Part shown: in pieces, positions 4,183 to 50,890 of the stretch
How the letters are laid out: each line of letters begins with the position of its first letter
Position numbering within the stretch: the first letter of the stretch is position 1
Assembly: GCA_044892505.1 (NCBI GenBank)
Contig: CM097882.1
Span: 35,774,001-35,838,000, forward strand
Length of the DNA: 64,000 nucleotides
Direction: 5' to 3'
Origin: Schmidtea nova
Taxonomy: Eukaryota
Made by a program: the position numbers and the translations under genes
The notes under the pieces: model-generated
The model's database searches: none
Told to the model about the DNA's origin: nothing
What the model saw: the letters and a program-made list of their open reading frames with translations, nothing else

Positions 4183-5652
4183 TCATTTCATTTCCATACT
4201 GTTATAATTGTTATTATTTTTCAATTTAACGTAAATGGTCTCAGTTTCACTGTCTTCGGCATTCTGAAAGAGTTGTCGGTTTTTTGTTTCAAAGGGTAGC
4301 AGGCAAATCAAGAAACAACCTATCAAATTCAATACAAAAAACACCATTACACCACCAAAAAAAGAATATTTAGCCATTAGTATGTTGACAATCAAAGATG
4401 AAAGCATTCCGCCAATTCTTGAAGCGCAATTGCAAAGACCAAACGCCGTACTTCTCACAGTCGTTGGAAAGACCTCTGCTGTATATATATAGGCAAGATT
4501 AAATATGCAAAATACTGAACCTCTCAAAATAAACAAAGTAATACTGAAAAATGTGGAAACCATGCAAATTGTCAATGACAATATTGAAATAGACAAGATC
4601 AAAGACAAAATAAAAAAACATAATTTTCGATTAAAAAAAGCGACGAAAATTGTAAAAACGACAAGCATTAGTAATTCTCCACTAATCGAGATGTAGGTAT
4701 CTTTGTACGTATTCCATGACAATATGTCACAGCAAGAGTTGTCAATTGTCGAATTCGATGACAAAGGGAAAACCACAAGTAATTTCAATTTCCAAAAACA
4801 TTTTCGAGGAAACTCATTTATCCTTGAAATAAGTAAAACCACCCCATAATAACTGATTCCGGCGGTAAACCATAGGTAGAATGTTATCAAAGTTGTCGAG
4901 ATATACTTTCGATGAATCAAGTCCTTGAATGAAGAATTCTCGCGGCTTGGTTGGTTGACATTGTCAATTTTCTCTGATTTATTGAACCGAGCCATTTCAT
5001 TTAAAACATTTAAAGCTTCCTCTCGTCTGTTCATGAGTAATAAATATCTGGGAGATTCCGGTATCCAAAAGCTTAAGGGAATTCCAATGGTTAATGGAAT
5101 CGTAGAAAACACTAAGAACCATCTCCATCCAAGATTCGGAATGACAAAATAGGCGAGAGTAGTTGCATAATACGATCCGATAGACCAAAATCCAAAAATT
5201 ACATTTATCAAATTACTTCGATGTTTCATAGTGGAAAATTCCGTTATCAGAGTTATAAACGAAACGGTAGTTCCGCCAAAATTGAATCCAATCAACAACC
5301 TAATGAAAATTATCCATTCGATTCCTGGAGCAGTTGAGCACAGCAAGCCGAAATACAGCACCAAACCGTTGCTTAGGATCAGAATTATTTTCCTTCCAAA
5401 AACATTGCATGCTTCTCCGTAAAGTATTCCACCGAACATCATTCCGACGAATAGCGATGTTGCTAAAAGAGAAACCTGAAAAGCATTGAGTCTCCAATCA
5501 CAGGCCAATGCCGGCCCGAGAAAAGATAGCAGCATTATTTCAGAGGCTTCACATGACTGTAAGATGCAAAATATCGATACAAGGATCACGTTGAACTTTC
5601 CAAATCCAATTTTAGTGAAAATATTCTCCAAATTTTCGGAATTTGGATCCAT
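4183..5652 (-). CDS. intronless SVOP/SV2-like major facilitator superfamily transporter (489 aa)
   Basis: Uninterrupted ORF with about 12 hydrophobic segments and SVOP-family motifs: IGFGKFN, ASEIMLLSFLGP, FGRK, R.LIG...GG, EF, WRW, PESPRYL, YIYTAEVFPTTVRSTAFG and LPFETKNRQL. Confidence 0.92.
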   Translation of the reverse strand: MDPNSENLENIFTKIGFGKFNVILVSIFCILQSCEASEIMLLSFLGPALACDWRLNAFQVSLLATSLFVGMMFGGILYGEACNVFGRKIILILSNGLVLYFGLLCSTAPGIEWIIFIRLLIGFNFGGTTVSFITLITEFSTMKHRSNLINVIFGFWSIGSYYATTLAYFVIPNLGWRWFLVFSTIPLTIGIPLSFWIPESPRYLLLMNRREEALNVLNEMARFNKSEKIDNVNQPSRENSSFKDLIHRKYISTTLITFYLWFTAGISYYGVVLLISRINEFPRKCFWKLKLLVVFPLSSNSTIDNSCCDILSWNTYKDTYISISGELLMLVVFTIFVAFFNRKLCFFILSLILSISILSLTICMVSTFFSITLFILRGSVFCIFNLAYIYTAEVFPTTVRSTAFGLCNCASRIGGMLSSLIVNILMAKYSFFGGVMVFFVLNLIGCFLICLLPFETKNRQLFQNAEDSETETIYVKLKNNNNYNSMEMK

Positions 5653-6070: not shown

Positions 6071-6202
6071 CATAATTATCTTTTTTCACCTTTGATCTTT
6101 TTTTATTATTATTATCAATAATTCTCATAATGATGACTATTGATCAAAAATTTTTTTTATAAACAATAACAATATTTCGGCACAGCCTTTATCAAGTGTG
6201 TA
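5989..6202. repeat. (TA)n microsatellite joined to one arm of the palindromic MITE family
   Basis: (TA)n at 5989-6067 is followed by AATCATAATTATCTTTTTTCACCTTTGATC...CGGCACAGCCTTTATCAAGTGTGTA, identical in design to the arms at 13.5, 22.5 and 30.0 kb. Confidence 0.85.
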
Positions 6203-9200
6203 TATATTGCTGTTCTCGCTTATTTTTTTCAAACATCATGGAAAATTGCCACATACCTTAGAAATGACTGTTCGTTTTCTCTCCATTCGAGTTTCATAGC
6301 ATTGCCAGTTAAAAGAAATGAGTGTGTTTTTAATTAAATTGATGTTTATGAATATGAAAATATTGTTGGGCAAAAACCACAAATTGTTTTAATAAAGCGA
6401 TAACCCCATAAGTAGAGAGCGCGCAAGATTCAGTTTTAACCCAAAAATCCAATAAAAATCCAAGCGATTAAGTGGAAAACACCAAAAGGTGAAGTGGACT
6501 CAAAACACATCAACCAGTAGGGAACGCGCTAGCTGTGAGTCTGAAAGCCCTTACATTGAAACCTCGAGAAAAATCAAATGCCATCAAAAGAAGAACGTTT
6601 AAAAGTTAGAATAGGCGGAAAACCCATTGAAAATACCCATAAAAAACGGAATTGTGTTATAAAACCTTCAGTGCAGGAAAAATTAACAAAATTTTAGCCG
6701 AAAACTGTGATTTTATCAAAATATTTCACATTAACAACAAAAAGAACTAATATTGATCGAAATATCTAAATTAAATTAAATCGAACAAATTTCGATTCAA
6801 AAATAAAAATTTTGGATTAAAATAAATTATTTGTGTTTTATAAAAAATTATTACACAAAAATATGGATTTAATTTTCGGAAAATCATTAGAATTAATTTA
6901 GAAAAATTAAACGGAAAATTCTAGAACAATTTGTTTTATTACACTACTGAAGGTAACGCAAAATCGATGGTATATATACCGCCATCAAAATGGCAGAAAT
7001 CAGAATTTGTGGAAACCTTAATTTTACTTTCAATCTATTTTTAAAAAAATTTCAATTCCCGGAGAAGAAGTTATTTTTCCAAGAAAATCTTCAGAAAAAA
7101 AATTTAGGAGTTGCCAAGAGATTTTCACAGAAAAATTTCCGGAGAGAATCTTTCAAGAGAAACCCTACACCGTTGAGCAGAAGAGCAGTAACCAATTTAT
7201 TATTAACATTCGGAAGACATATTGTTAGGTGAGAGTTTGGCTATTTAATTTTTTTTTGTTGTTAATTACTTGTCGATTTATCGACATGGGAGGCCCTAGA
7301 AGTCATGCCCCTGGGACATCCCATGTCGACATCGCTCTTATTTAATTAAGGTTTTTATATTTTTATTTTTTTTTGTATATTGATAATGGAAATATTATAA
7401 TTATATGATTTTATCTCGTAAATTTTGGTTTATCATTAACATTGTCACAGGTTCTCATAATTATAAATTTCAGTATGATAAATGAAAGTTACCAAATAAA
7501 TATTCTAAAATAAAAGTTATCAAATAAAAAAAAATTTTTTCTTTCTTCCGTACCCCCTGAAGCCTGTGTCTGGCCTTGTGCCGATCGGGTGGAAGTAGCC
7601 TGAGCGGATCGCTAGTTCGATACGTAAATTGATCAGCCCATATTTCCGAGTCCAGATGAATAGCCTAAACATCCATGTTCACTTCATCCCAACTGGGGAA
7701 CAGTGGCTTGACCAAAGACAAGTTGTTATATTAATGATATTTGATTTATAATAAATGTAGTTTATCCGAATTTATAATTTTTGACATATTTACCTTTTAA
7801 CAATTAATACCACATGTGAACGTAAAGACCAATCTCTCCAGCAACGTCTTTTCCATTATGAAAAATAATTGTGCAAGAACATTTTACTCGTCGTCGCCTT
7901 CACTCTCGCAACAACTGTCATCTTATCCGAAAACGCAAGTAAATGGAAGCTAATGTTGGAAAAGAATCATATGAAATAATGCTCAAAACTGATAGAATGA
8001 TCATGAAATGAAATGAATTTAGGACAAGTATTGATTGATCTGAATTAAAACTCATTCATTATATAAATAAATTTTCTCTGGTGAATCTTGTTTTCGGGAG
8101 CCTGAAGTTCCTAAGTGAAGTGTCCCGAAAATTTCGCGCGCACTTTGATTGGGAAATTCATACTCGGACGAAACCGAAATTTACTTTGCCTGATGTTAAA
8201 AACATTCGGTGAGAGATTTACAACTTATTTTATTTTTATTTTTTATTTAGCATATAAAAACTTTTTAGATTAAATGCTTATTTGGATTTCTAAATTTATG
8301 GATAAGAATTTATCATTATGTGGATTTCGTGTTGATCAAAAAATTTACTTTCTATTATATTGGAAAATTTTTGATAAAAAAATTGTGAACCAAAAAATTT
8401 GTTTCCAAAGCATTTGTAAATCGAAAATTATATCGAACCCCTAAAAATTACCAATCTAAGACATTGTTATTATATAGAAGATTTTGTCATTTTGTAAAAT
8501 TCCTAAGAATTTATAAATCAAAACTTGTATTGAAACCCATAAAAATTGTAAATCGAGAATATTATTCTTATATTAAAAATTTTTATCATCTTGTAAAATT
8601 CTAAGTTCGAGATTTTATAGGAAAATTTTATGATTTATATATATATTAAAATATAAAAATTTGAATTCAAAATGCATATTATCAAAATTTAGAAATTTTA
8701 TTATTTTCATGAAATTATAAATTTAAAAATTTATAAAATCGTAATAAAAATATTATTATTATTTTACTTTAAAATTATTTTGTATATATAAATTTATATT
8801 ACTTCATAAAATACCCCACGATATCTCCAAGTCATAATGCAGCCCTATTTGCAAAAATTTACATCCATTTCATTCAATAGTAACACCCATATTTAATACA
8901 ATACAAAATACATTCAGTCACCGACACACACACACACTACCACATTTCGATCAATAGGACCTGCTATATTAAACAATACATTCACTCACCAACATACACG
9001 ACATGATTTCATCTCACAATATCCACTAGCGACATACATCCAGACGATCCCCACAAATATTCATATAATCCCACCCATTGTTTATAGCCTATTACCACAG
9101 TATCATTCTCAACATACAAACACACGCAAATCACATAAGATTATAACAATACGATATGTATTTCAGACCTAAGATAACGTATACATACATGCGAACTTAC

Positions 9201-10991
9201 AAACGCTACATCCACCCTCGAACAAATTATTTCCACTAACCATCAACATTCGGAAAATCGACCCATCTACGTAGGAAACCGAAAAATTCCCTCAGTAAGG
9301 TCCTATAACACTGTTTGTAGACTGTAACATTCTAGCATCTTTTGGTCCTTTTACCTGGGAAACGAGTTTTCCAACAAACCCACAAAATTTGCTATATAAT
9401 AATCTACCACCCCTAAAATAAATCGGAAGAAACAGGATTGATACATTAGTAACTGATCATTTTCAAAAATTATCATAGGGGATTGGACAAGTTCAAAAGG
9501 TAGTGCTTAAATTTCAGTTGAAGATATCTCTAGACGCGGTTAAATTCATTACTTAAAGATTAATAAAAATTTTTTTTTCTCTTAAAAAATTATTGAATCA
9601 TAAAAATCAAAATAAATAAAGTCCAATTTTATATTTCAAGAGAAAAATTGTACACCGAAAATTTACTCACATTTTTATAATACCTGGATACAGTTAGATA
9701 AAAGGCATCATGAAATCCAGAGGCATAATAATTCGATATAAAGTGCACGAAATTGAGCGGGAGGTTGTCGGAGATGATGGAGAAATATGAAAATCCAACT
9801 AACAAAAAATTCATATACAAAATTAAGAAGTTTCGACCATATCAGACGAAAAATGGCTGGAAAATGCTTCCTCATAAATAGGTTAAATTCCATAAATATA
9901 GTTGATAGCGACAACCCGACGCTGATGAAATAAATGATCCAACGAGAGTGATTCGTGAACTGTGAAGAGAATAGGAGAATGTAGTAGCCTCGAAGTGAGA
10001 GTCAAACTGATAGACAGTTCGTAATAGTGCGAATATAAAATCTGTAAAATGTTACATAATTATTGCGTTATTGACAGCAAGAAAGTTACCTCTTTTATAG
10101 CGGATGGGAAAAATCTGATTCCCGTTTTCATCAGTTCTACTCAGAATTTCCATTAGGGATTCTGAATTCGACCTTTGGCTGAAATCAATTAAATATACGG
10201 TAATGACAGAAAATCAATTTACTTAGAACCATCCAGTAGAAAGGGGAATCCATAGATCTAAAAATAAATTAAAATAAATAATTTTATTATGGAAATTAAA
10301 TTTACACATGATGTATTAGCCAATCAGAACTCATGGTATTTTGTTTTCCCTCTATATAGAATTTCCTTAAATCGGGGGAACGCCGAGGGTTTTGAGGGAA
10401 TTGCGGTTGAGATCGGATTTCCTAATTAAAAATTTAGTTTGAAATTGGAATAAGAAATTAAAATTTATGAATAAGAGGATTATCAGTACAATAAAATTAA
10501 CATGAAAATTATAGAATGTATATTATTACCGTTGATAAGGCCTCGGCGAAATTTTGAAAAGTCAAAATGATAAATTTTAATAAAATGCTAAAGATTTATA
10601 ATAAGCAAGATAGACATTAGGTATAAGAGATAAGCGAAGTTTTAGTTAAATTTATCAACACAAAAATATAAAAATCAAAAACATCCAGAAAATAATAATA
10701 GCTTGGTCTAAATAAATAAAAATTAATTACCCCGAAATTTTATGATAGATCAAAGATTTTTTCGATCTCTGAATTAAGTTGGCGATAGTATGCTTGAGGA
10801 TGAACTCGTAATTAATAACGAATGTGTAAAGATCCCTGTGATTTGAGAAATTTTGTGTACAATCGTTGGTTATAAAAAATCGATAAATGTTCATCGATCA
10901 AAATGATTTTATTTTTTTTTGATTTAAAATGAATATTTGAAATTGAATGTTGAGTGACGACTGGAATGGGTTATTATTGTATAATTTTTAG

Positions 10992-11447
10992 ATGTCCGAA
11001 ATGAATATTGAACAGAAATTCGAAGAGATGCACAAACTGATTGTGGAAAATGCCCGCCATAATCGCCGGGTAGACCAGTGTTTCGCCGAGATGGAGAGGG
11101 CGAAAACTTCAAATACGAATGCGTTACAGATCATGACGTCTCGGATGGAGAAGTTCAGAGCGCGATGCCGGGAGATGGAGTCGATGTGGTCGAACAAAGA
11201 GACCGTCGACAAACTCCGCAAACAAATCCAGATGCTGTTGCAGCAGACTGCGGACGACGCAATGAAATTGCGGGCGTGCCGAGTCACAATCAGGGACTTG
11301 GAAACCCAAAATGAACGGCTAAGATTGGACAGTGGCATCATTGCCGCCGTCCTGCCAAAACCACCCTGCCTGTCTCAAGAGTTGTTCCCAGTGAGGGTCG
11401 AGGAACAGATATTGGCACCTCCTGCTCCCGCGAAAACAGCCAGGTAG
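10992..11447 (+). CDS. orphan 151-aa coiled-coil protein, markedly GC-richer than its flanks
   Basis: Open ATG-to-TAG frame with heptad-like helical composition and a Pro-rich tail. AATAAA lies just downstream at about 11454 and about 11682. No family was recognised. Confidence 0.5.
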   Translation: MSEMNIEQKFEEMHKLIVENARHNRRVDQCFAEMERAKTSNTNALQIMTSRMEKFRARCREMESMWSNKETVDKLRKQIQMLLQQTADDAMKLRACRVTIRDLETQNERLRLDSGIIAAVLPKPPCLSQELFPVRVEEQILAPPAPAKTAR

Positions 11448-12227
11448 AAGCCCAATAAAGGGGTGAGAGCTCGAAGAAGACGTCGGCAGGAAGCGAGACT
11501 GCTGGGACAAGTCCGCAAGGAATCTTTGGACATAATAGACATTACCTCCTTGTGATTTTATTGACGAATATTTTATCGTGTATCTATTTTTCTTTGTAGT
11601 TTGTGTTGTTATTTTTTTTTTGTTGTTAACATTAAAGTTTTCCCTTGTTTTTTTTTATTATTGGTTTGAATGATTGAATGGAATAAAGTAATGTATAGAA
11701 TAAATTGAGTAAAATCAACTGAGGTTCAATAGTAAATGAAGTTCATGAAGTTTTTCTGAAGTAAATAATACATAGGAGGGACAAAATGGGCATTAAACCT
11801 TCTATCGGTAGCCCTTGGACCCAGGAGATATTCGGTCGATCATAGTTTCGTATTGACGACGCTCACTGATTGCGAATACCCACCCACTTGTTACAGTACC
11901 AACGTTACATAGTGACGGGTAACAAGATGGTAGTTTAAATGTTTTATGTGTTGAGTTGTTGATGAGAGCCATAGAAACGTCAAGGTCATATTGACGATCA
12001 ACAACCCACCAATATGAAAATTTTAAGTTGGTTTGTAGACAAATTTTTTTAGCAATTTAATTAAAATAACCAATGTGGTTTTTGACGATTCTCATATCTT
12101 TCTTTAGATCTTTATTCTACACTCGGGGCCGACTGGTGGGTTTTTGCCGCCCTAGGCAAAACGCAAATTTGCCGCCCTATAGCCTATATGTCAAGTTCAT
12201 TTTGAATTATTTAAATCACTGTGCGTT

Positions 12228-12440
12228 AGTAGGAGGATGTGTCCCAGTCAGATACAGTACCCCCCTTAAATTTTTTAAAATTACATAACACCGGACACTT
12301 GACCATTGCATCACTCGTACGTGACCAGCTCACTTGTGCAAAAACACACTTATGGCACGTGTTGCCAATGGCAACTACTACTTTTAGAAATATTTTTGCA
12401 TCATTTGCACGTGTACGTCACACTTACTGACCATTGCATA
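12228..12440 (+). repeat. left terminal inverted repeat of Polinton derivative
   Basis: Reverse complement of 19343-19557 with scattered substitutions. Contains repeated CACTT(AT)TGACC-like motifs. Confidence 0.88.
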
Positions 12441-12532
12441 TTCCGCGCGTGTCCGACATGCTTATTGTCCAGCACACTTATGGATAGTAGCCGGTACACT
12501 TATTGACCGACACACCATCAGGTAATCACTAC

Positions 12533-12670
12533 CCGCCAACCGCCAACCACCAACCGCCAACCGCCAACCACCAAGCGCCAACCGCCAACCGCCAACCGCC
12601 AACCGCCAACCACCAACCGCCAACCGCCAATCACCAACCGCCAATCACCAACCACCAACCGCCAACCGCC
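12533..12670 (+). repeat. 7-bp tandem repeat (CCAACCG/CCAACCA)
   Basis: About 20 imperfect units are directly visible. They occur only in the left half of the Polinton derivative. Confidence 0.9.
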
Positions 12671-13203
12671 CGCTGCGCTCAACTGCGATCCATTAAACTA
12701 TCGAAAATCTAGATTAGTATTATAATTATATAGTTTTCAAGTTATATAAATGCAAGATTTCTCATAAGGATTCAGATTCGTAATGCTTTCATGAAGTCCA
12801 TAAAGGATTAAAGATAGAACATATATTTTTATTCTTAATTCATGCCATTATTTAAGAAATATGTAATCAAGTATCTTAATGGTAAAAAAATAATCCGGAA
12901 TGGTTTTTATATAAAAATATACAAATTTATACAATCTGTTTACTAACTACTTTATCAGTAGTATTTGATAATTTTATTTAAAATAATCAAATTTATTTTT
13001 TAATTAATTTATCTTTATTTCAATATTAGTCAATTATGGCCCAATTTTTATCAAAACTTGTATACATATCAAATTCAATATGCTGAATCCGACTTTATTA
13101 CAAAAAATAGAAAAAAAATTAGTCCAAAGTGGGAGTTGAACCTAGGCCTCTCACATATAAACATTTTTAATTATTTTCTCGACTAATACTTGTCAGATTT
13201 GAA

Positions 13204-13401
13204 CCAAAATTTCTATTTATATCAAATTCAATACGCTAAATCCGATTCCTTAATAAAATTTTCATAAGAAACGTCAAAGAAAAAATTATTCAACCTTGAG
13301 AGTTAAAACTGGGGTCACACAATTAGAAATCCAAAGCCTTTCCAACTAAGCTACATTCCACACTTTTAATAGACAAAATTTTAACATATATTTGATTTTT
13401 C
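13204..13401 (+). repeat. outer inverted-repeat segment of the fold-back element
   Basis: Reverse complement of 19143-19341, e.g. GAGAGTTAAAACTGGGGTCACACAATTAGAAATCC versus GGATTTCTAATTGTGTGACCCCAGTTTTAACTCTC. Confidence 0.9.
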
Positions 13402-13422
13402 TAATCTTTACATAGGTTTATT

Positions 13423-13424
<2 letters not shown>

Positions 13425-13511
<87 letters not shown>

Positions 13512-13706
13512 CAATAATTCTCATAATGACTATAGATCAAATTTTTTTTATAAACAATAACACAATATTTCGGCACAGCCTTTATCAAGTGTGTATTTAC
13601 ACACTTGATAAAAGCTGTGCCGAAATATTGTGTTATTGTTTATAAAAAAAATTTGATCTATAGTCATTATGAGAATCATTGATAATAATAATAAAAAAAG
13701 ATCAAA
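13425..13706. repeat. (AAT)n microsatellite plus full palindromic MITE copy
   Basis: (AAT)n runs 13425-13503. A near-perfect palindrome follows at 13503-13706, centred on GTGTGTATTTACACAC, and runs into an N gap. Confidence 0.9.
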
Positions 13707-13920
13707 NNNNNNNNNNNNNNNNNNNNNNNNNNNNNNNNNNNNNNNNNNNNNNNNNNNNNNNNNNNNNNNNNNNNNNNNNNNNNNNNNNNNNNNNNNNNNN
13801 NNNNNNNNNNNNNNNNNNNNNNNNNNNNNNNNNNNNNNNNNNNNNNNNNNNNNNNNNNNNNNNNNNNNNNNNNNNNNNNNNNNNNNNNNNNNNNNNNNNN
13901 NNNNNNNNNNNNNNNNNNNG

Positions 13921-16345
13921 ACACAAAAAAAAGACCTTTTCAAATAACAAAATATATTTCAATAACAATTTTCATTCTGGAAATATCTACATTAAGAACT
14001 TGTCATTTCAGTCGTTTAATGTATTGACTCCTAAATAATGCCCGAATGCAAAACTTTCATTTTTACCCACCCATTGAGGCTTATCATCGTTGTTACTTAA
14101 AGCAATTTTAGAATTCTTAAAAGTATACAACTCATGATTTCGCGTCCCTATCCGAGTTTGAGGAACAGAAAAGATTTGATTATTATTGTAGCAATCAAGA
14201 TAAGAAAGATTTTTTATCTCAGTTCCTTCTAAATATACTCCCTTCGCTTTATTACTTTCAGATTCACCCAAAAGACTGTAGCACTTCGGACTTAAGAAAA
14301 CCCATTCATTGGATCCAAGTCCCTTACTCTCGTATTTAAATTTGCCAATGACTGAGTTAAGGTTTCTTGAATACAATGGATGTTCAGGAATAACCTATAT
14401 AGTTTTAATAATAAAAATAATAATAGAGTTAATAATACTTGAAACCAATCAAAATGAAACTTGACACATAAAAAATACGTATTTATTTTTTAAAAACTTT
14501 GATTTACAAATTTTTTTTTACATTCTTCATCCATACCAGATTTGGTAAAACAATATGATATAAGTACATTATTTTGTGGTGATTAGTTGACAACTAGTTA
14601 AAAAGTTTCAAAATCTATATATATTGAACAAAACACTTATTAGCACATAATTAAAAAGTTTTGAAGCTAAATCATGAAAATCAATCCAAATTAGTCAAGT
14701 TATCAAAATATTTTAAATATTTCTGTTATTATATATTTATTATAGAAAAGACATGTTAGTTGATATCAGTTGATAATAGTTAAAAATTAACTAATAATAC
14801 GTGGTAATCATTATTTTTACAAGTTCTCAGTGAAAGTAGTAAACAATGATTTAATTATAATTGTAAAAATACTAAGAGAAATTCCTAAGAAAAGTGACTC
14901 TCAAAAATAATTTAAATATAATCTTCAAAAATTTATTAACAAAAATTTAGTTTCAAAAATTTAGTTTTAAAAATTTATTCACAGAATTTAGATTCAAAAA
15001 ATTATTCACAAATTTTAGTTTTAAATTTATCCACAGAATTTAGATTAAAATCTATTTTTTACCCAGTTTTTGTTCACTAACCAGTTAGCAACCCATTAAT
15101 TATTGATAAAATATACATATACTTTGATTTATATTTAAAGTTAATTTCGTAATATTTTAAATTAATATATATCATTAGAATACAATTTTTAAAATTACTT
15201 TGACTTAAATTTACTTTTGAATCTTAGAATAAATTTTAGTAAACACATCTAAATTTATTCAATTAAAATTGATTTTTTTCCAAATTGAATTTTGTCGGGA
15301 AAATATAGTTAGTTACACAATCAATTTTATACTAATTAATTAAAACTTATTTAAAATTGATGTCTTGAAGATTGGCTACATTATTGAGTTCCAAAATCAT
15401 TTCACAATGATACCAAGATATTTATGAATTTATTTGCAATTATTTATTTTACTAAAAGCAAAAATTATTATCATTTATTTGAAAATATGCGGATTTTTAA
15501 ATTGAAACTTAAATAAAATTTTAATTGTTGGCTAATTAAAAGTAATTTTTATAGGTTTAAAATTAATCTAAAATTAAAATAATAATCGATTGATCAATGT
15601 ACAAAATTTTATATTACTTAGTCAGCAACTTTAACAATTGATTAATCTTTTAAATAAATTAGCCAACTGAATTTTTAAATAAGACGAAAAGAAAAAGAAT
15701 AATAGAAATTTCTATATGCTTTATTTTCAAAATTGTAATGCTTAATTTTCAAATATTTTGGCTAATAAAGTATTTATTTTGAACCAAAACTAGTAGTTAG
15801 AATACTAAAGTTTACTTTATTATAACATTTAAAATGAAAAACAAATCAATTTACTCATTATCAATTAGTTACGAATTATTAATCAATTCGTTAATAATTT
15901 AATACACGTTAAAAGGAATTTAAATACATCTTTTTAAGAATTTATTTCATTAGATTTCAAAAATTTTTAGAATAAATTTTAAAATATTTTTAATAAAAAA
16001 ACTAAATGCAATATACTCGATTGATTGACAACCATTGACAACAAACTCATTTGTGTAATAAGATGTTTTGTCAGCGTATTTATTATCACTAGGTTTTGAA
16101 ACCATTAATGAATACTGTTTTTATGTATTGATTGAAGAAAACATGTAATAAAAACTAAAATCAACCAATTAAATTATCCAAATTCACTCCAGTGTGTACA
16201 TTATTTGTATAACATGTGGTATTTTTATACTGATATTTTTCTATCGATTTGAATACAATTACTATACATTGCTACAAAAATCACTACATTTTGGTATTAA
16301 ACTGATATAACTAAAATTGAGGTTTCCTTTTAAAATTACTTGCAC
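13921..16345 (+). repeat. left 2.4-kb arm of giant inverted repeat
   Basis: Reverse complement of 16534-18964 throughout. At least about 10 differences are seen by eye, so identity is high but not complete. Confidence 0.95.
14008..14376 (-). pseudogene. C-terminal fragment of Polinton protein-primed DNA polymerase B (copy 1)
   Basis: Reads EHPLYSRNLNSVIGKFKYE...FLSPKCYS...KAKGV...YLDC...HELYT..SKIALSNNDDKP....SFAFGHY. This matches the Polinton pPolB C-terminal pattern HPLYS..NKKVIGKFKDE...L.PK.YS...KAKGV...KIALS..DDKR...LA.GHY. The N-terminal ~85% of the gene is absent. Confidence 0.9.
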
Positions 16346-16533
16346 CTTTTTAATTGATATTCATCATAAAACCTATACAATTATCAATTAAACAGTTAAA
16401 TTGATAATTGTATAGGTTTTATGATGAATATCAATTAAAAAGGTGGAAGTAATTTTTTTTATAATTTGTGAAGAAATTTCTATTATTAATTTAAAAAAAT
16501 TAAAAAATTAAATTAAAAAATTAAAAAATTAAA

Positions 16534-18964
16534 GTGCAAGTAATTTTAAAAGGGAACCTCAATTTGAGTTATATCAGTTTAATACCAAAATTTAGTGATT
16601 TTTGTAGCAATGTATAGTAATTGTATTCAAATCGATAGAAAAATATCAGTATAAAAATACCACATGTTATACAAATAATGTACACACTGGAGTGAATTTG
16701 GATAATTTAATTGGTTGATTTTAGTTTTTATTACATGGTTTCTTCAATCAATACATAAAAACAGTATTCATTAATGGTTTCAAAACCTAGTGATAATAAA
16801 TACGCTGACAAAACATCTTATTACACAAATGAGTTTGTTGTCAATGGTTGTCAATCAATCGAGTATATTGCATTTAGTTTTTTTATTAAAAATATTTTAA
16901 AATTTATTCTAAAAATTTTTGAAATCTAATGAAATAAATTCTTAAAAAGATGTATTTAAATTCCTTTTAACGTGTATTAAATTATTAACGAATTGATTAA
17001 TAATTCGTAACTAATTGATAATGAGTAAATTGATTTGTTTTTCATTTTAAATGTTATAATAAAGTAAACTTTAGTATTCTAACTACTAGTTTTGGTTCAA
17101 AATAAATACTTTATTAGCCAAAATATTTGAAAATTAAGCATTACAATTTTGAAAATAAAGCATATAGAAATTTCTATTATTCTTTTTCTTTTCGTCTTAT
17201 TTAAAAATTCAGTTGGCTAATTTATTTAAAAGATTAATCAATTGTTAAAGTTGCTGACTAAGTAATATAAAATTTTGTACATTGATCAATCGATTATTAT
17301 TTTAATTTTAGATTAATTTTAAACCTATAAAAATTACTTTTAATTAGCCAACAATTAAAATTTTATTTAAGTTTCAATTTAAAAATCCGCATATTTTCAA
17401 ATAAATGATAATAATTTTTGCTTTTAGTAAAATAAATAATTGCAAATAAATTCATAAATATCCTGGTATCATTGTGAAATGATTTTGGAACTCAATAATG
17501 TAGCCAATCTTCAAGACATCAATTTTAAATAAGTTTTAATTAATTAGTATAAAATTGATTGTGTAACTAACTATATTTTCCCGACAAAATTCAATTTGGA
17601 AAAAAATCAATTTTAATTGAATAAATTTAGATGTGTTTACTAAAATTTATTCTAAGATTCAAAAGTAAATTTAAGTCAAAGTAATTTTTAAAATTGTATT
17701 CTAATGATATATATTAATTTAAAATATTACGAAATTAACTTTAAATATAAATCAAAGTATATGTATATTTTATCAATAATTAATGGGTTGCTAACTGGTT
17801 ATTGAACAAAAACTGGGTAAAAAATAGATTTTAATCTAAATTCTGTGGATAAATTTAAAACTAAAATTTGTGAATAATTTTTTGAATCTAAATTCTGTGA
17901 ATAAATTTTTAAAACTAAATTTTTGAAACTAAATTTTTGTTAATAAATTTTTGAAGATTATATTTAAATTATTTTTGAGAGTCACTTTTCTTAGGAATTT
18001 CTCTTAGTATTTTTACAATTATAATTAAATCATTGTTTACTACTTTCACTGAGAACTTGTAAAAATAATGATTACCACGTATTATTAGTTAATTTTTAAC
18101 TATTATCAACTGATATCAACTAACATGTCTTTTCTATAATAAATATATAATAACAGAAATATTTAAAATATTTTGATAACTTGACTAATTTGGATTGATT
18201 TTCATGATTTAGCTTCAAAACTTTTTAATTATGTGCTAATAAGTGTTTTGTTCAATATATATAGATTTTGAAACTTTTTAACTAGTTGTCAACTAATCAC
18301 CACAAAATAATGTACTTATATCATATTGTTTTACCAAATCTGGTATGGATGAAGAATGTAAAAAAAAATTTGTAAATCAAAGTTTTTAAAATATAAATAT
18401 GTATTTTTTATGTGTCAAGTTTCATTTTGATTGGTTTCAAGTATTATTAACTCTATTATTATTTTTATTATTAAAACTATATAGGTTATTCCTGAACATC
18501 CATTGTATTCAAGAAACCTTAACTCAGTCATTGGCAAATTTAAATACGAGAGTAAGGGACTTGGATCCAATGAATGGGTTTTCTTAAGTCCGAAGTGCTA
18601 CAGTCTTTTGGGTGAATCTGAAAGTAATAAAGTGAAGGGAGTATATTTAGAAGGAACTGAGATAAAAAATCTTTCTTATCTTGATTGCTACAATAATAAT
18701 CAAATCTTTTCTGTTCCTCAAACTCGGATAGGGACGCGAAATCATGAGTTGTATACTTTTAAGAATTCTAAAATTGCTTTAAGTAACAACGATGATAAGC
18801 CTCAATGGGTGGGTAAAAATGAAAGTTTTGCATTCGGGCATTATTTAGGAGTCAATACATTGAACGACTGAGATGACAAGTTCTTAATGTAGATATTTCC
18901 AGAATGAAAATTGTTATTGAAATATATTTTGTTATTTGAAAAGGTCTTTTTTTTATTTTGTGTC
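16534..18964 (-). repeat. right 2.4-kb arm of giant inverted repeat
   Basis: Reverse complement of 13921-16345. It ends at an N gap. Confidence 0.95.
18503..18871 (+). pseudogene. C-terminal fragment of Polinton pPolB (copy 2)
   Basis: Same 122-aa peptide as 14008-14376 except KAKGV is KVKGV. Confidence 0.9.
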
Positions 18965-19342
18965 NNNNNNNNNNNNNNNNNNNNNNNNNNNNNNNNNNNN
19001 NNNNNNNNNNNNNNNNNNNNNNNNNNNNNNNNNNNNNNNNNNNNNNNNNNNNNNNNNNNNNNNNNNNNNNNNNNNNNNNNNNNNNNNNNNNNNNNNNNNN
19101 NNNNNNNNNNNNNNNNNNNNNNNNNNNNNNNNNNNNNNNNNNAGAAAAATCAAATATATGTTAAAATTTTGTCTATTAAAAGTGTGGAATGTAGCTTAGT
19201 TGGAAAGGCTATGGATTTCTAATTGTGTGACCCCAGTTTTAACTCTCAAGGTTGAATAATTTTTTCTTTGACGTTTTTTATGAAAATTTTATTAGGGAAT
19301 CGGATTCAGCGTATTGAATTTGATATAAATAGAAATTTTGGT

Positions 19343-19557
19343 GATGCAATGGTCAATAAGTGTGCCGGACACGTGAGGATGATGCAAAAATATTTCTAAA
19401 AGTAGTAGTTGCCATTGGCAACACGTTCTATAAGTGTGTCTTTGCACAAGTGAGCTGATCACGTACGAGTGATGTAATGGTCAAGTGTCCGGTGTTATGT
19501 AACTTTAAAAAATTTAAGAGGGGGGTACTGTATCTGACGGGGACACATCCTACTACT
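19343..19557 (-). repeat. right terminal inverted repeat of Polinton derivative
   Basis: Ends ...GGGACACATCCTACTACT, followed by the TSD TGCGTT. Confidence 0.88.
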
Positions 19558-19721
19558 TGCGTTCATCTTTCATGTTTCTCTTAATATTTATTGTTGTAAT
19601 TATCTTTTCTACTGCCCGTCTACAATGCTATTTATTCTACACCGTCTACTGAAAAAATACATGGTCAGAGAATGTGTGCGATGTAATTGTTGAAATACAG
19701 GCAAACCGTACAGACAATAGT

Positions 19722-21420
19722 TCAATCAAAAAAGAATGGAATGCGCCTTATTTTTATTGAGGCAAATTCCCGAGCAAGTTCACCGATGTCCACCTTGGAA
19801 GCCATTTCTTTCTCAATGGAGAGAATAGCCAAGTCCGATAAACGATCTTCTGCCATTGTAGATCGCAAGTAATTGTTTATTATTTTCAGTTTTGAGAAGC
19901 TGGATTCTCCTGCTGCAACAGATACTGGGAGAGTAAGCATGCTGCACAAAGCCACAGACAAATTTGGTAATACACGGCACAGCTGATTAGCACAGATAAA
20001 TTCAAGCATCTGCTTTGGTGTTTTTCTCTCTTGAATTCGATGTTGTAGGCATTTTATTTCTTCAAAAAGACGGAGGACATCAATGTCTTTGTCACTGTCG
20101 TCAGTCAGAGCTTTTTCTAATGATCGGCATTTTTCAAGAAGGGTGGCGGACTGATAGTCTCCTCCAATACAACTGAGAAACCCAAACAGTGTGTGATGAA
20201 CATTCAAGAGCGTGAAGCGCTCTTTTATAGAGTTTATAGCAGCATCTAACACCACGAAGAAAAACTGACACTTGAACGACTGTCTGGGATCTGATATTTG
20301 ATCATCAGTCACTTCATACTGAAACATTCGTTTTTTCGTACGAGCCCGAACTTGCGTCACAGCAGGAAATGTTGGGTCTATCTACAGATCTTTTGCTAAG
20401 CCTTCTGCCTCTTCAAGAGTTTTGAGAAAGCTGTCGTCAGAGTGATAGTTTACGAGATATTGAATGGTTTTATTCAGCTGAGTGACAGCTTCGGACATGT
20501 CGACAGATTGAAATTGAAGCAGTTTGTTCGCAAAGTTGACCTCGTAAAGGATGTTATACCAAACGACCACACTAACAAAAAATTTGAAGCAACGCAGATG
20601 AAATGCAATTCCTTGAGCATCTGCACGAGTTTGTGCGCCAGTCACTCCAGTTAGGGTCGTATCTTCGATAATGGAAACAAGGGCATCATAGACTTCTCCA
20701 ATTTGATTACGTAAAACATGAACGGCATTTACTCTACTTGACCACCTCGTTTTACTGAGAGGTTTGACAGTTAGACCCGACACATTATTCATGAGAACCT
20801 TCCAGCGATGTGTGGACGCAGAAAAAAACACATACACCGCTTGTACGACTCCAAAATATTTGACAGCTTCTGTGCAGGAATGTGCAGCATCGTTGACGAC
20901 GAGGTTCAGTGAATGAGCAGTGCAAGGGATATAAAATGCTCGAGGATTTAAATCAAGAATTTTCTTCTGCACGCCATTATGCTTTCCTTTCATGTTAGAG
21001 CCGTTGTCGTAACCTTGCCCTCTGAGATTAGTCAAAACTAAGCCCATTTCCTCAATCTTCTTCACAATTAAATTCGTCATTCCAGCTCCAGTTGTATTAG
21101 ATGCGGCCTCATATTGCAGAAAATGTTCGTGAACAGCAACATTCACAACACGTTCTTCTTGAGCTTCGCACAAGGACACAAATCGAATCACAAAAGTTAT
21201 TTGTTCAACACGACTAACGTCAGGTATACAATCAAAGATTATTGAGAAGTATTTTGCATTTTTGGCTTCACTAAGAATTTCGTCTCTCACCTTTTTTGCC
21301 AACAATCCAATGATTTCATTTTGAATATTCTTGCCCGCATAGTGCACATGAATTTCATCACTTTTGATACGCCGGATGTGTTCTTTCATTACAGGATCAA
21401 AGTTTCTTAAGTATTCGCCT
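19722..21420 (-). pseudogene. hAT transposase (ZMYM1-like/DUF4371 type with C-terminal dimerisation domain), N-terminally truncated, one in-frame stop
   Basis: Motifs IQNEII, YFSIIFDCIPDVSRVEQ, RGQGYDNGSNMKG, IPCTAHSLNLVV, LSKTRWSSR and TLPVSVAAGESSFSKLKII..YLRSTM..DRLSDLAILSIE. ORFs 20382-21389 and 19722-20360 are in the same frame, separated by one TAG (AKDL*IDPTFP). Confidence 0.93.
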
Positions 21421-22472
21421 ATAGCTCGAGCCGGCCCCGTCTACACTGATTTATTTTTCATATTATATAAACAAAATGCCACATACTTTGGAGAAGACTG
21501 TCTGTTTTCTCTGTACTCGATTTTTCCTCAGTCCTCCTGCTGTTTATAAATATGAAAATAAGCGTAAAATATTTTTTTAAAGAAAATTTATTTAAATTAT
21601 AAAATATTTTTATATTGTTTTAAATTTATTTGAAATTTTAAAAATAAAACTTAACACCTTATTTTTTAAAAGTTATGGTTAATTTTTCAATCAATTTAAT
21701 TATTAGATTTATATTGGAATGTTTGACTGAAAAAGCATTTGAAAATGAGAATAATGTTCCCGAAATATATTGGGTGGAATATAATAGTATTTAATTTTCA
21801 GATTTAAATATATTTGATAAATATAATAAATTTAAATAAAATTATAAATTAAGATAATAATTTAAATTTAAATATTGAAGTTTTAATTGGCTTGACTGCA
21901 AATATCATATTTAAGAATGAATGAAAACTAAAAATTCAAAATATTTATTGAATATTTGCATATGAATATGCCCTATTAAATTGTTAACTCATGCTTGCTA
22001 AATTATCCACAAATATAAAAAAGAAATCGTTTCAATGATATTGAAATTTGTGTTGTGTTTAAAATTTTAGTCTTCTGATATAATGGATGTTCTTNNNNNN
22101 NNNNNNNNNNNNNNNNNNNNNNNNNNNNNNNNNNNNNNNNNNNNNNNNNNNNNNNNNNNNNNNNNNNNNNNNNNNNNNNNNNNNNNNNNNNNNNNNNNNN
22201 NNNNNNNNNNNNNNNNNNNNNNNNNNNNNNNNNNNNNNNNNNNNNNNNNNNNNNNNNNNNNGCTGTTTTTCTGGTTGATCTATTGTAATAGCAAAACTTT
22301 TATAACTAGAATTGGACAACTGTAAAAATAAAATTAACTTCATTTTCCCATTGACTCCAGATCATTTAGCTGTTGCTTTAAAATGGTTTGACCCAGTATG
22401 ACACACGATCAGTTTTTGTTTAACTAAAGCTAAATTTATCTTTTTCTTTTGGATTTATGATCAAATAATAGT

Positions 22473-22706
22473 TTATTATTATCAATAATTCTCATAATGA
22501 TGACTATAGATCAAAAAATTTTTTTTAAACAATACCACAATATTTCGGCACAGCCTTTATCAAGTGAGTATATACACACTTGATAAAGGCTGTGCCAAAA
22601 TATTGTGTTATTGTTTATAAAAAAAATTTGATCTATAGTCATCATTATGAGAATTATTGATAATAATAATAAAAAAAGATCAAAGGTGAAAAAAGATAAT
22701 TATGAT
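22473..22706. repeat. palindromic MITE copy
   Basis: Arms TTATCAATAATTCTCATAATGATGACTATAGATC...CAGCCTTTATCAAGTG fold around the centre AGTATATACAC. The right arm continues to AAAGATCAAAGGTGAAAAAAGATAATTATGAT. Confidence 0.9.
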
Positions 22707-29988: not shown

Positions 29989-30209
29989 CCTTTGATCTTT
30001 TTTTATTATTATTATCAATAATTCTCATAATGACTATAGATCAAAATTTTTTTTATAAACAATAACACAATATTTCGGCACAGCCTTTATCAAGTGTGTA
30101 TTTCTAAATATAAATACACACTTGATAAAGGCTGTGCCGAAATATTGTGTTATTGTTTATAAAAAAAAATTTTGATCTATAGTCATTATGAGAATTATTG
30201 ATAATAATA
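29989..30209. repeat. palindromic MITE copy
   Basis: Same arms as the other copies, centre GTGTGTATTTCTAAATATAAATACACAC. Bordered by an N gap and (TA)n. Confidence 0.9.
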
Positions 30210-31439
30210 TATATATATATACCTGTTTTCGTACATTAAATGTTTCTATTATATAAATTAAAAATAATCAATAGCAAATGAAAACTTACGTTGATGTTAA
30301 ATTTTGATTTTGTATAGTTTAAAAGATTTATTATGTGATAGACAATCTGATAGAAAAATTAAAATATTCACACAAACACAAAACATTATGAAAATACACG
30401 CAAACTTTTAAAGGTACATTTTTACGTGATTAAAAGGCATATAATAAATTTATTTATTTTAAAATATGGTTTTTGGGTATATATTTGGAATATTTCTAAA
30501 GGGAGTTTTCGAGAAAATGGATAGATTACATCGTTAGATTTATTTTAATGAATTTTAAAATAAAGTTTTTTATTTCCAAAAATTATTTTGCAAATTTATC
30601 CATTTTCATTAGGTAAAAAAATAATCCCGTTTAATTATTTGCAAATTATAGACAGTTAAACATATTTACAATGCAATTTAAATCATTTTGAAGTCTGAGA
30701 TAATGCAGGACAGTAAAATTTGGCAATTCTTGAAATTAAAAAATTAAGCTTAATTTAATTATTTCTTGGAAAATCAAAAGAAATATTTCAAAAATAGAAA
30801 ATTGATTTTTTAACTTACGTTTAAATGTAAATAATTCCAAAAACATGGAAGAAAATCATGATTACATAGAAAGTATTTATTTAATTAATAAAATATTGTT
30901 AAAAAAATATTTTTACTTACGTTTAATGTAAAATATTTCAAAACACTTCATAAAAATCATAGTTTTTCTAAAACGCTAAATAATATAATATCAAAGTAAT
31001 ATTGTAGAATATAGATAAACTTTCAAAGCTTCTATAGTGATCTCATATCATTGTAAAATCAAAATAAAAGCTTTAAAAGATATCTTGATAAATAAACTTA
31101 CTTGATAGCCATTTTTAAAAAATAGATAAATGAAAATTTGAATTAATTCAACAAAGTAACTATGAGTAACACGTAGGTGTACACACCTACTTGTATCATA
31201 GTTACCTTATATAATAAGGAATTAAAACTTAAAATATGGTTTGTTTTTAAATGACAATATTGAAATAATTCTATGAACTAGCTGGATACTATTGGAGTTT
31301 TTTAAAAATTTCATTCCGGTGTTTAAGGTTAAAATTCTCTAATTTTTAAAGTTCATTAATAATAATACTGATTTTTTTAAATTACTAATTTATTGTTATA
31401 ACTTTTTAATTATTTGTCAAATGAAAATTTTGTTTACAG

Positions 31440-50633: not shown

Positions 50634-50890
50634 TTTATCTTATTTCAATAATTATTATTATTATCTATTATCTTTATAATTACAGAGATTGATTGACACA
50701 AATATTTTCCAAAGTTGGTTAAAATGAAAATAAAGGAAATGCATTTTAAAATAATAAATTTGGTTTATAATAATTGTTTTTATAATAATTTATTTTTATA
50801 TTAATTTATTTTATATTTTATAATCATTATAAAATATAAAATAAATAATTAAGGTTAGTATTTAGGATTAAGTTAATATAACGATTGTAA

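What the first reader, a model, noticed from the sequence alone, without database searches (positions are those of the whole stretch)
12228..19557. Integrated fold-back ('snap-back') Polinton: a 7.3-kb palindrome of two Polinton ends, with an intact 6-bp TSD
Seen: AGTAG(G/T)AGG termini, ~210 bp TIRs, an exact TGCGTT duplication on both sides, and mirror symmetry continuing inward (13204-13401 versus 19143-19341, and 13921-16345 versus 16534-18964). Each arm carries only the outward-reading pPolB C-terminus. Established: Polintons have 5'-AG termini built of short repeats, 6-bp TSDs and a protein-primed polymerase, and are normally 15-20 kb with integrase, ATPase and capsid genes; none of those genes is visible here. 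Inference: this may be a defective-interfering, self-complementary genome made by template switching during strand-displacement replication, analogous to snap-back genomes of adenovirus/AAV, then integrated in trans by a helper's integrase. That would be a palindromic class of non-autonomous Polinton. The alternative is an inverted duplication that formed after insertion.
Basis: partly seen in the sequence, partly recalled or inferred. Interest (0 to 1): 0.9.

Follow-up and report, generated by a model that had tools for sequence, protein, structure and literature searches.

The report
Palindromic remnant of a Polinton element
A 7.3-kb dead piece of a virus-like Polinton (Maverick) transposon sits here with intact end repeats and a 6-bp target duplication, and its inside is an almost perfect mirror-image duplication; this is unusual, but one gapped copy cannot show whether the mirror arose before insertion, after it, or in the assembly.

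Summary
An exact TGCGTT duplication flanks 12228-19557. The ends carry the published Maverick end motif and a 212-bp inverted repeat. The interior is a spacer-less palindrome centred near 16394, with arms of 2474 and 2570 nt and 13 mismatches. Each arm carries only the last ~10% of a protein-primed DNA polymerase (pPolB), as an open 128-codon frame reading outward. No other Polinton gene is present in the 64 kb. Calling it Polinton-derived and non-autonomous is therefore well supported.

The snap-back origin is not shown, for three reasons:
- **Uneven arm identity.** The terminal repeats are 92.5% identical, the next block 98% and the inner arms 99.5% (Fisher p = 4e-10). A one-step fold-back before integration predicts uniform identity.
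- **Asymmetries.** The left arm has 759 bp and a nested hairpin repeat (MITE) that the right arm, as far as it is read, lacks. The right arm has 91 extra bp near the centre.
- **A defective template.** About 1.96 kb of AT-rich non-coding DNA follows the polymerase piece, so the folded template was already defective.

I favour in-situ palindrome formation inside an old remnant (~0.4). Integration of a snap-back genome (~0.2) and an assembly artefact (~0.2) remain open. The whole palindrome is one contig between two gaps. No other copy of the family could be found.

The parts
12222..12227 (.). Left copy of the 6-bp target site duplication (TGCGTT)
   Evidence: Read directly; alignment of the two ends.
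12228..12439 (+). Left terminal inverted repeat, starting AGTAGG (one change from the (AGT)2 end motif). It is built of short repeated motifs and is 41% G+C.
   Evidence: blastn self-comparison gives 92.5% to the right end. Alignment A1. Internal direct repeats D3 and D6. End motif as in PMC8097293.
12440..13202 (+). Segment A, present in the left arm only. It begins with repeat-like motifs, holds a (CCGCCAA)n array at 12533-12670, and ends with a 72% direct copy (13044-13118) of the start of block B. It looks native to this end, not a foreign insertion.
   Evidence: No counterpart on the right, where block B' abuts the terminal repeat at 19342/19344.
13203..13402 (+). Block B, left copy of the second mirrored block. 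It contains tRNA-like strings that pass neither ARAGORN nor Rfam.
   Evidence: 98% to 19143-19342. The 4 mismatches lie 35, 47, 65 and 131 nt from the outer edge. No tRNA found.
13403..13706 (.). Left-arm-only stretch: an (AAT)n run at 13425-13504 and a nested palindromic MITE at 13496-13706, running up to the gap.
   Evidence: TRF. The MITE has copies at 6091-6206, 22464-22684, 29991-30218 and 50886-50986.
13707..13919 (.). Assembly gap (213 N) between the left contig and the palindromic contig. Not filled.
13920..16393 (-). Left inner arm of the palindrome (2474 nt, 22% G+C).
   Evidence: Global alignment to the reverse complement of 16395-18964: 13 mismatches, one 5-nt indel and one 91-nt indel.
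14008..14394 (-). pPolB gene remnant, left copy. It holds only the C-terminal ~10% (128 codons plus the stop) and reads outward. One 5' truncation removes the rest of the gene. The remaining frame has 0 stops and 0 frameshifts.
   Evidence: phmmer found 645 hits with E<=1e-3, aligned to the last ~120 residues of 1100-1400-aa proteins. Those proteins hit PF03175 DNA_pol_B_2. Residues 1206-1336 of the 1369-aa P0016 are matched. Profile positions 1052-1174 of 1191 are matched, E 1e-39.
14395..16343 (.). About 1.95 kb of AT-rich non-coding DNA in the left arm, mirrored in the right arm. It shows no polymerase or other protein signal.
   Evidence: No ORF longer than 51 aa. No tblastn or profile hit. 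No other copy in the window.
16332..16456 (.). Centre of the palindrome: axis near 16394, with 62-nt perfect-type hairpin arms and a 1-nt loop.
   Evidence: Inverted pair I5; sequence; arm alignment.
16445..16535 (+). 91-nt extra block (9% G+C, low complexity) found in the right arm only, flanked by an 18-nt direct repeat. Placement is uncertain by 18 nt.
16395..18964 (+). Right inner arm of the palindrome (2570 nt including the extra block).
18485..18871 (+). pPolB gene remnant, right copy. It has the same extent and the same single 5' truncation, with 0 stops and 0 frameshifts. It differs from the left copy by 2 nucleotides and 1 amino acid.
   Evidence: E 1e-38.
18965..19142 (.). Assembly gap (178 N) between the palindromic contig and the right contig. 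Not filled.
19143..19342 (-). Block B', right copy of block B. It directly abuts the right terminal repeat.
19344..19557 (-). Right terminal inverted repeat, ending ...ACTACT-3', which is the (ACT)2 end motif.
   Evidence: motif as in PMC8097293.
19558..19563 (.). Right copy of the 6-bp target site duplication (TGCGTT)

Best explanation
This is an old, integrated, non-autonomous remnant of a Polinton/Maverick. One integration event placed a molecule with two Polinton ends at a TGCGTT site; that step is shown. The copy kept only the polymerase-proximal end region, namely the terminal repeat, subterminal repeats, the last ~10% of pPolB, and non-coding DNA.

Later, inside the chromosome, its interior became a palindrome; this step is inferred. 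The proposed sequence is as follows:
1. A break or stalled fork occurred in the non-coding interior.
2. The strand folded back on a short inverted repeat near 16394 and copied the left arm outward.
3. The copy reconnected to the right-hand chromosome in the repeat the two ends already shared, within or next to block B'.

This model accounts for four observations. The inner arms are young (99.5%) while the tips keep older divergence (92.5%). Identity changes inside or near block B. The palindrome is confined to the element. What was duplicated is a defective template.

The MITE, the 91-nt block and the 759-bp difference are later or junctional changes. The element has no coding capacity and most likely does nothing now. 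Its main effect is structural, as a hairpin- or cruciform-prone site.
For: - Integration signature: an exact 6-bp duplication, 212-bp terminal repeats and an (AGT)2//(ACT)2-type end motif. These match the published Maverick features (PMC8097293; PMC3014272).
- Polymerase identity of the only ORF, and absence of every other part of pPolB and of other Polinton genes from the 64 kb.
- Non-uniform arm identity: 15 differences in 214 columns at the tips, 4 in 200 in block B and 13 in 2425 in the inner arms. Fisher p = 4e-10 for the inner arms against the tips.
- Differences thin out inward: 6 of the 14 terminal-repeat mismatches lie in its innermost ~27 nt, and 3 of the 4 block-B mismatches lie in its outer third.
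- The centre is spacer-less, as expected of fold-back priming.
- A spacer-less 2.5-kb palindrome is unlikely to survive as long as the tips have been diverging (established knowledge of palindrome instability; the abstracts of PMC8053094 and PMC4057610 describe this instability).
- Replication template switching at short inverted repeats is a documented route to inverted duplications in chromosomes (10.1101/2023.07.03.547456, abstract).
Against: - Arm-to-arm gene conversion could keep the long contiguous inner arms alike while the short tips, isolated by the 759-bp heterology, diverge. The identity gradient therefore does not exclude an old palindrome that was integrated as such.
- The right arm lacks segment A. 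Reconnection was thus not a simple homologous crossover unless A arose later.
- The block-B mismatch pattern is not significant on its own (about p = 0.1).
- There is only one copy and no outgroup, so the changes cannot be polarised.
- The palindrome lies in a single contig between two gaps, so its very existence rests on the assembly.
Confidence: 0.4

Rival explanations
1. Snap-back genome integrated as such. During protein-primed strand-displacement copying of a Polinton-derived molecule, the polymerase switched strands near what is now 16394. This made a self-complementary molecule with the same end at both tips. A helper's integrase then inserted it at TGCGTT.
For: - Both tips are valid Polinton ends around a single intact 6-bp duplication.
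- The order of blocks is mirrored from tip to centre: terminal repeat, block B, gap, polymerase 3' end, non-coding DNA.
- The centre has no spacer, which matches the definition of snap-back defective genomes (PMC13506859).
- Snap-back DNA genomes are documented for a parvovirus (PMC8235507, abstract). From my own memory, not verified here, palindromic or hairpin deletion derivatives are also known for other protein-primed replicons.
- The model explains without further assumption why the palindrome is confined to the element.
Against: - Arms made in one step should be equally diverged. The tips are 92.5% identical against 99.5% for the inner arms (p = 4e-10). Later gene conversion must be added to save the model.
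- The arms hold only ~10% of pPolB and then ~1.96 kb of non-coding DNA. The template was therefore already defective and would itself have needed copying in trans.
- A 759-bp asymmetry lies next to one tip.
- No second copy was found, though no host genome could be searched.
Confidence: 0.2
2. Assembly artefact. Only one arm exists. The middle contig folded back through a real short hairpin near 16394 and ran back along the other haplotype, or along reads of another copy. Scaffolding then placed this self-complementary contig between the two end contigs.
For: - The whole palindrome is one 5045-bp contig (13920-18964) bounded by gaps on both sides. It starts and ends at the same base of the two arms.
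- The arm difference of 0.5% plus two indels is of the size expected between haplotypes.
- A spacer-less centre is what a fold-back join produces.
- The end contigs themselves carry only the terminal repeat and block B as inverted repeats.
Against: - The arms are not identical: 13 mismatches, a 5-nt indel and a 91-nt indel. A simple graph fold-back would give identical arms.
- Contiguous sequence crosses the centre.
- The scaffold links the contig on both sides with similar gap estimates.
- No other palindromic contig occurs in the 64 kb although there are 8 gaps.
- The read data cannot be inspected here.
Confidence: 0.2
3. Internal-deletion derivative of a Polinton family with very long, gene-bearing terminal repeats. 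The parent had terminal repeats of several kb that included the polymerase 3' end. Loss of the unique middle left repeat against repeat.
For: - Butterfly polintons with ~2-kb terminal repeats that hold genes in two copies have been described (10.1101/2025.02.07.637071).
- Maverick terminal repeats reach 1447 bp in vertebrates (PMC8097293).
Against: - A deletion of the middle would have to be exactly symmetric to leave a spacer-less centre.
- In replicating long-repeat genomes the outermost parts should be the most alike, and here they are the least alike.
- ~1.96 kb of non-coding DNA inside a terminal repeat is not what compact Polintons show.
- No relative with such repeats was found.
Confidence: 0.08
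4. Not a Polinton at all: another DNA transposon with a 6-bp target duplication that captured a polymerase fragment.
For: No integrase, capsid, ATPase or protease gene is present. Only ~10% of pPolB is present.
Against: - The end motif is the one reported for Mavericks, together with a 6-bp duplication and long terminal repeats.
- The polymerase piece lies next to the end in both arms.
- Its relatives sit in pPolB + rve integrase + A32-like ATPase contexts.
Confidence: 0.03

Closest known systems
Degraded or non-autonomous Polinton/Maverick copies (Kapitonov & Jurka 2006; Barreat & Katzourakis 2021, PMC8097293)
   Same: 6-bp target duplication, terminal inverted repeats within the published size range, an (AGT)2//(ACT)2-type end motif, a pPolB remnant, and loss of coding capacity. 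Most genomic copies are degraded in this way.
   Different: The interior is a near-perfect palindrome holding two copies of the same end region. The element is only 7.3 kb. The polymerase reads outward, whereas in most vertebrate Mavericks that module points to the centre and only the cane toad elements point outward.
Butterfly polintons with ~2-kb gene-bearing terminal repeats (preprint 10.1101/2025.02.07.637071)
   Same: Inverted duplication of coding sequence at the two ends of an integrated element with a target duplication.
   Different: Those elements keep a full unique middle and all core genes. Here nothing lies between the mirrored parts, and the duplicated gene piece is a 10% stump.
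Snap-back defective viral genomes (definition in PMC13506859; parvovirus snapback genomes in PMC8235507)
   Same: Self-complementarity over most of the length, a minimal non-complementary centre, retention of one genome end at both tips, and no coding capacity.
   Different: Those are free replication products seen in virions or infected cells. This one is chromosomal, has unequal arm identity and three arm asymmetries, and derives from an already defective template. Whether it ever replicated is unknown.
Chromosomal inverted duplications made by fold-back or template switching at short inverted repeats (for example the ODIRA model, 10.1101/2023.07.03.547456)
   Same: A spacer-less or short-spacer centre at a small inverted repeat, and young, nearly identical arms.
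   Different: Those events usually span large genomic segments. Here both junctions fall inside one 7.3-kb transposon remnant. I explain this by capture of the copied strand by the element's own terminal repeat, which is an inference.
Foldback (FB) transposons of Drosophila (mentioned in PMC6431247)
   Same: An element made almost entirely of two long inverted arms.
   Different: FB arms are arrays of tandem subrepeats, and FB belongs to another superfamily. These arms are unique sequence with a polymerase fragment.

Membership tests
Polinton/Maverick | Perfect 6-bp target site duplication | tested here: met
   TGCGTT at 12222-12227 and 19558-19563. Criterion from PMC8097293 and PMC3014272.
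Polinton/Maverick | Terminal inverted repeats (46-1447 bp in vertebrate elements) | tested here: met
   212/214 bp at 92.5% identity.
Polinton/Maverick | Conserved end motif, 5'-(AGT)2//(ACT)2-3' or (AG)3//(CT)3 | tested here: met
   The right end is ...ACTACT-3', an exact match. The left end is 5'-AGTAGG, matching 5 of 6 positions (motif).
Polinton/Maverick | [quoted passage not shown] | tested here: not met
   Only profile positions 1052-1174 of 1191 are present, once per arm. The piece is truly pPolB, but the gene is about 90% missing.
Polinton/Maverick | Encodes an RVE-type integrase | tested here: not met
   No ORF of 60 aa or more other than the polymerase stump. tblastn with the rve protein of L002 finds nothing in the window.
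Polinton/Maverick | Encodes a packaging ATPase, protease and capsid proteins; size 12-25 kb | tested here: not met
   7330 bp with no such ORFs. It is a derivative of the family, not an autonomous member.
Snap-back defective genome | Reverse complementarity over nearly the whole length, with a minimal centre | tested here: inconclusive
   The inner 2 x 2.5 kb meet this, with a 1-nt loop. Overall there are asymmetries of 759 bp, at least 300 bp and 91 bp, which could be later changes.
Snap-back defective genome | Both tips copied from the same genome end in one event, so the arms should be uniformly alike | tested here: not met
   Identity is 92.5% at the tips, 98% in block B and 99.5% in the inner arms, p = 4e-10. 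The feature can be rescued only by assuming later conversion.
Snap-back defective genome | Made during replication and propagated with a helper, so a mobile family with several copies should exist | not testable with these tools
   No host genome is available. Exact-protein look-ups, a 90%-cluster search and two metagenome scans found no copy of this family.
Chromosomal fold-back inverted duplication | Young arms, a centre at a short inverted repeat, and an outer junction distinct from the centre | tested here: inconclusive
   Young arms and a spacer-less centre are present. The outer change of identity falls in or near block B, and the B'/terminal-repeat junction shows no clear microhomology. 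No pre-duplication allele is available.
Foldback (FB) transposons | Arms made of tandem subrepeat arrays | tested here: not met
   TRF finds only short low-copy arrays in the arms.

The most novel reading that the evidence does not exclude
The locus is a fossil snap-back (defective, self-complementary) Polinton genome. On this reading it was made by strand switching during protein-primed replication and then inserted by a helper's integrase, and the inner arms were afterwards kept alike by arm-to-arm conversion. It would be the first genomic trace of replication errors of Polintons, and the founder of a palindromic class of non-autonomous Polintons.
Probability: 0.2. Interest if true: 0.8.

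Novelty: new variant of a known kind. Interest (0 to 1): 0.4.

Why it matters
How Polintons/Mavericks replicate has never been observed; protein-primed strand-displacement copying is inferred from their polymerase. A chromosomal copy that is a tip-to-tip palindrome of one end would be indirect sequence evidence for that mode of copying, and for trans-integration of defective genomes.

If the palindrome arose in place instead, it shows how a transposon's own terminal repeats can capture and confine a fold-back repair event, leaving a hairpin-prone site in the host genome. If it is an artefact, it is a warning for repeat annotation in gapped assemblies.

The present data do not decide among these three, and the element itself has no coding capacity.

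Tried and rejected
- **Pfam and PDB sequence searches with the 122-aa ORF** gave nothing. The identity came only from the all-against-library phmmer search and the Pfam hits of the long relatives.
- **Exact-protein look-ups** of both arm ORFs are not on record. The MFS and hAT ORFs are not in the collection either.
- **The search of clusters at 90% identity** found nothing closer than 60-61% identity.
- **Three ENA metagenome contigs with relatives** (L001-L003) share no nucleotide similarity or end motif with the element. They served only to show a Polinton gene context (pPolB + rve + A32-like ATPase in L002) and that the C-terminal block is a separate ORF in the two closest relatives.
- **Metagenome scans** with a terminal-repeat pattern and with the protein both returned nothing.
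- **Empty-site test** against the second hAT copy in the window failed because there is no nucleotide similarity. 'Inserted into a hAT' is therefore unverified. The site lies 164 bp beyond the stop of the hAT transposase ORF.
- **tRNA genes in block B and segment A** were rejected.
- **The microRNA hits** are below threshold and merely reflect hairpins.
- **Templated origin of the 91-nt block**: only a 16-nt AT-rich match to the arms was found, which is not convincing.
- **Hidden polymerase remains in the 1.96 kb**: none by tblastn or by a profile with filters off.
- **Host identification**: the best named relative of the transporter is an SVOPL-like protein of a hemichordate at 34% identity.
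- **The founding Polinton paper and an early paper on adenovirus defective DNA** are not held in the library.

Full report
**What is there**

The window is AT-rich (about 25% G+C) and has eight assembly gaps. At 12228-19557 lies a 7330-bp insertion flanked by an exact 6-bp direct repeat, TGCGTT, at 12222-12227 and 19558-19563. The flanks differ beyond those six bases. The element begins 5'-AGTAGGAGG and ends CCTACTACT-3'.

Self-comparison gives three mirrored blocks:
- the terminal repeat, 12228-12439 against 19344-19557: 14 mismatches plus a 2-nt indel in 214 columns, 92.5%;
- block B, 13203-13402 against 19143-19342: 4 mismatches in 200, 98%;
- the inner arms, 13920-16349 against 16531-18964: 99.5%.

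It is the only long inverted repeat in the 64 kb.

**The gaps, tested first**

Both gaps (13707-13919 and 18965-19142) lie in non-coding DNA between block B and the 3' end of the only gene fragment. The two reading frames sit wholly inside the middle contig, 88 and 93 bp from the gap edges, so no frame depends on a gap.

Continuity across the gaps cannot be tested with these tools. The middle contig (13920-18964) is tied to its neighbours by scaffolding alone, and it begins and ends at the same base of the two arms.

**Anatomy of the palindrome**

With the axis placed at 16394, the arms are 2474 and 2570 nt. They differ by 13 mismatches, a 5-nt indel at the outer edge, and one 91-nt low-complexity block (9% G+C) present only in the right arm. 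That block lies at about 16445-16535 and is flanked by an 18-nt direct repeat. The hairpin 16332-16393/16395-16456 is just the innermost part of the arms. The palindrome therefore has no spacer, and the '182-nt centre' is an arm indel.

Outside the inner arms the symmetry is broken in two places:
- The left arm alone carries segment A (12440-13202). It starts with motifs like those of the terminal repeat, contains a (CCGCCAA)n array, and ends with a 72% direct copy of the start of block B, so it looks native to this end.
- The left arm also carries an (AAT)n run and a palindromic MITE (13496-13706) that has four other copies in the window.

On the right, block B' abuts the terminal repeat directly.

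**The gene fragment**

The only real ORF is 128 codons long (14011-14394 on the minus strand, 18485-18868 on the plus strand) and reads outward in each arm.
- Pfam and PDB sequence searches found nothing.
- A search of 1.84 billion representative proteins gave 645 hits at E<=1e-3. These align to the last ~120 residues of 1100-1400-aa proteins that match PF03175, the organellar/viral type B polymerase family, often with an endonuclease VII insert.
- The alignment to P0016 covers residues 1206-1336 of 1369.
- tblastn with 34 long relatives, and a profile built from them and run with filters off on all six frames, find only profile positions 1052-1174 of 1191, once per arm (E 1e-39 and 1e-38). 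Nothing else turns up in the element or the window.

Each arm thus holds one 5'-truncated pPolB stump with no stops and no frameshifts. The two copies differ by 2 nucleotides and 1 amino acid.

Inward of the stump lie about 1.95 kb of non-coding DNA at 20% G+C, with no ORF above 51 aa. No integrase, ATPase, protease or capsid gene is present.

In the two closest relatives (60-61% identity, ENA metagenome contigs L001 and L003) the same C-terminal block is also a separate ORF. This is consistent with an exon boundary where the stump starts. A third relative (L002) lies in a contig with an rve integrase and an A32-like ATPase, which is a Polinton context.

**Is it a Polinton?**

Published defining features of Mavericks are perfect 6-bp target duplications, terminal repeats of 46-1447 bp and end motifs such as 5'-(AGT)2//(ACT)2-3' (PMC8097293; also PMC3014272). 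The element meets all three: the motif is exact on the right and matches 5 of 6 positions on the left. It also contains a genuine pPolB piece next to each end. It fails every coding criterion. [quoted passage not shown]

The outward orientation of the polymerase differs from most vertebrate Mavericks, but it occurs in cane toad elements.

**How did the palindrome arise?**

A fold-back made before integration predicts arms that were identical from tip to centre, and so are uniformly diverged today. They are not. The tips have 15 differences in 214 columns against 13 in 2425 for the inner arms (Fisher p = 4e-10), and block B is intermediate. Six of the 14 terminal-repeat mismatches lie in its innermost ~27 nt, and three of the four block-B mismatches lie in its outer third. 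The higher G+C of the tips (41% against 22%) cannot account for a 13-fold difference.

The folded template was also already defective, being a 10% polymerase stump plus ~2 kb of non-coding DNA. And a spacer-less 2.5-kb palindrome is unlikely to persist for as long as the tips have been diverging.

The simplest reading is as follows. An old integrated remnant later suffered a break or fork stall in its interior. The strand folded back at a short inverted repeat and copied the left arm outward. The copy was recaptured by the homologous repeat at the right end, in or near block B'. That would confine the palindrome to the element without coincidence. I give this about 0.4.

**Rivals**

- *Snap-back genome integrated as such (~0.2).* It explains the tip-to-centre mirror order and the confinement at once, and such genomes are known elsewhere (PMC13506859; PMC8235507). 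It needs later arm-to-arm conversion restricted to the long contiguous arms, copying of an already defective template in trans, and a later 759-bp change next to one tip.
- *Assembly artefact (~0.2).* The palindrome is one contig between two gaps, with symmetric ends, a spacer-less centre and haplotype-like 0.5% arm divergence. Against this, the arms differ by substitutions and two indels, sequence runs through the centre, both sides are scaffolded, and no other such contig occurs in the window.
- *Deletion derivative of a long-repeat family (~0.08).* Gene-bearing 2-kb terminal repeats exist in butterfly polintons, but a symmetric deletion down to a spacer-less centre is unlikely.
- *A non-Polinton transposon with a captured fragment (~0.03).*

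**What could not be done**

No eukaryotic host genome is searchable here. Exact-protein look-ups, the 90%-cluster search and two metagenome scans found no other member of this family. The key test, other palindromic copies with other target duplications, therefore remains open.

Its transporter gene has only a 34-41% match, and the best named hit is an SVOPL-like protein of a hemichordate.

That step is listed under referred steps.

The three relatives' contigs (L001-L003) were fetched by look-up of proteins returned by the search. They are metagenome contigs of unknown host. I only read their gene tables and compared them as they stand. The profile used was a search model only, and nothing was printed from it.

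I stopped there and used it in no tool call, note or part of this report.

**Verdict**

This is a real and unusual structure in the assembly, and it is securely Polinton-derived. The snap-back reading is possible but not favoured by the internal evidence. Interest is moderate until the locus is confirmed by long reads and the family is counted in the host genome.

Noticed in passing
window 13496-13706; also 6091-6206, 22464-22684, 29991-30218, 50886-50986: A family of ~210-230-bp palindromic MITE-like repeats, 85-92% alike. Several copies lie beside or near assembly gaps. They give sub-threshold hits to microRNA models (mir-31, 48.4 bits against a gathering score of 51) simply because they are hairpins.
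   Followed up: partly
window 12533-12670: A (CCGCCAA)n / 21-nt array of about 20 units inside the left subterminal region of the element. It is G+C-rich in a 25% G+C genome and is absent from the right arm.
   Followed up: partly
window 13120-13150 and 13290-13350 (mirrored at 19195-19255): tRNA-like strings (D-arm-like and T-arm-like) in segment A and block B. Neither ARAGORN nor Rfam calls a tRNA. They may be decayed tRNA-derived repeats carried in the element's subterminal region.
   Followed up: partly
window 19722-21389 (-) and 48834-49478 (-): Two hAT transposase remnants. The first is split into two ORFs (DUF4371 and the hAT dimerisation domain). The Polinton site lies 164 bp beyond its stop codon.
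   Followed up: partly
window 4183-5652 (-): An intact 489-aa single-exon MFS/sugar-transporter (SVOP-like) ORF. Its closest protein in 5.8 billion clusters is only 41% identical, so the host genome seems absent from the collection.
   Followed up: partly
window 21786-22000 versus 61612-61820: A 216-bp inverted repeat pair (82% identity) between the hAT flank and the far end of the window. It is probably another dispersed repeat.
   Followed up: no
window 10988-11447: Two overlapping antisense ORFs (117 and 151 aa) in the most G+C-rich part of the left flank, with only weak coiled-coil-type Pfam hits.
   Followed up: no
L002 13925-14368 (ENA ERZ25039515 contig_33252): The Polinton-like contig that carries a relative of the polymerase also has a gene with a TBP (TATA-binding protein) Pfam hit, next to the integrase and the A32-like ATPase.
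   Followed up: no
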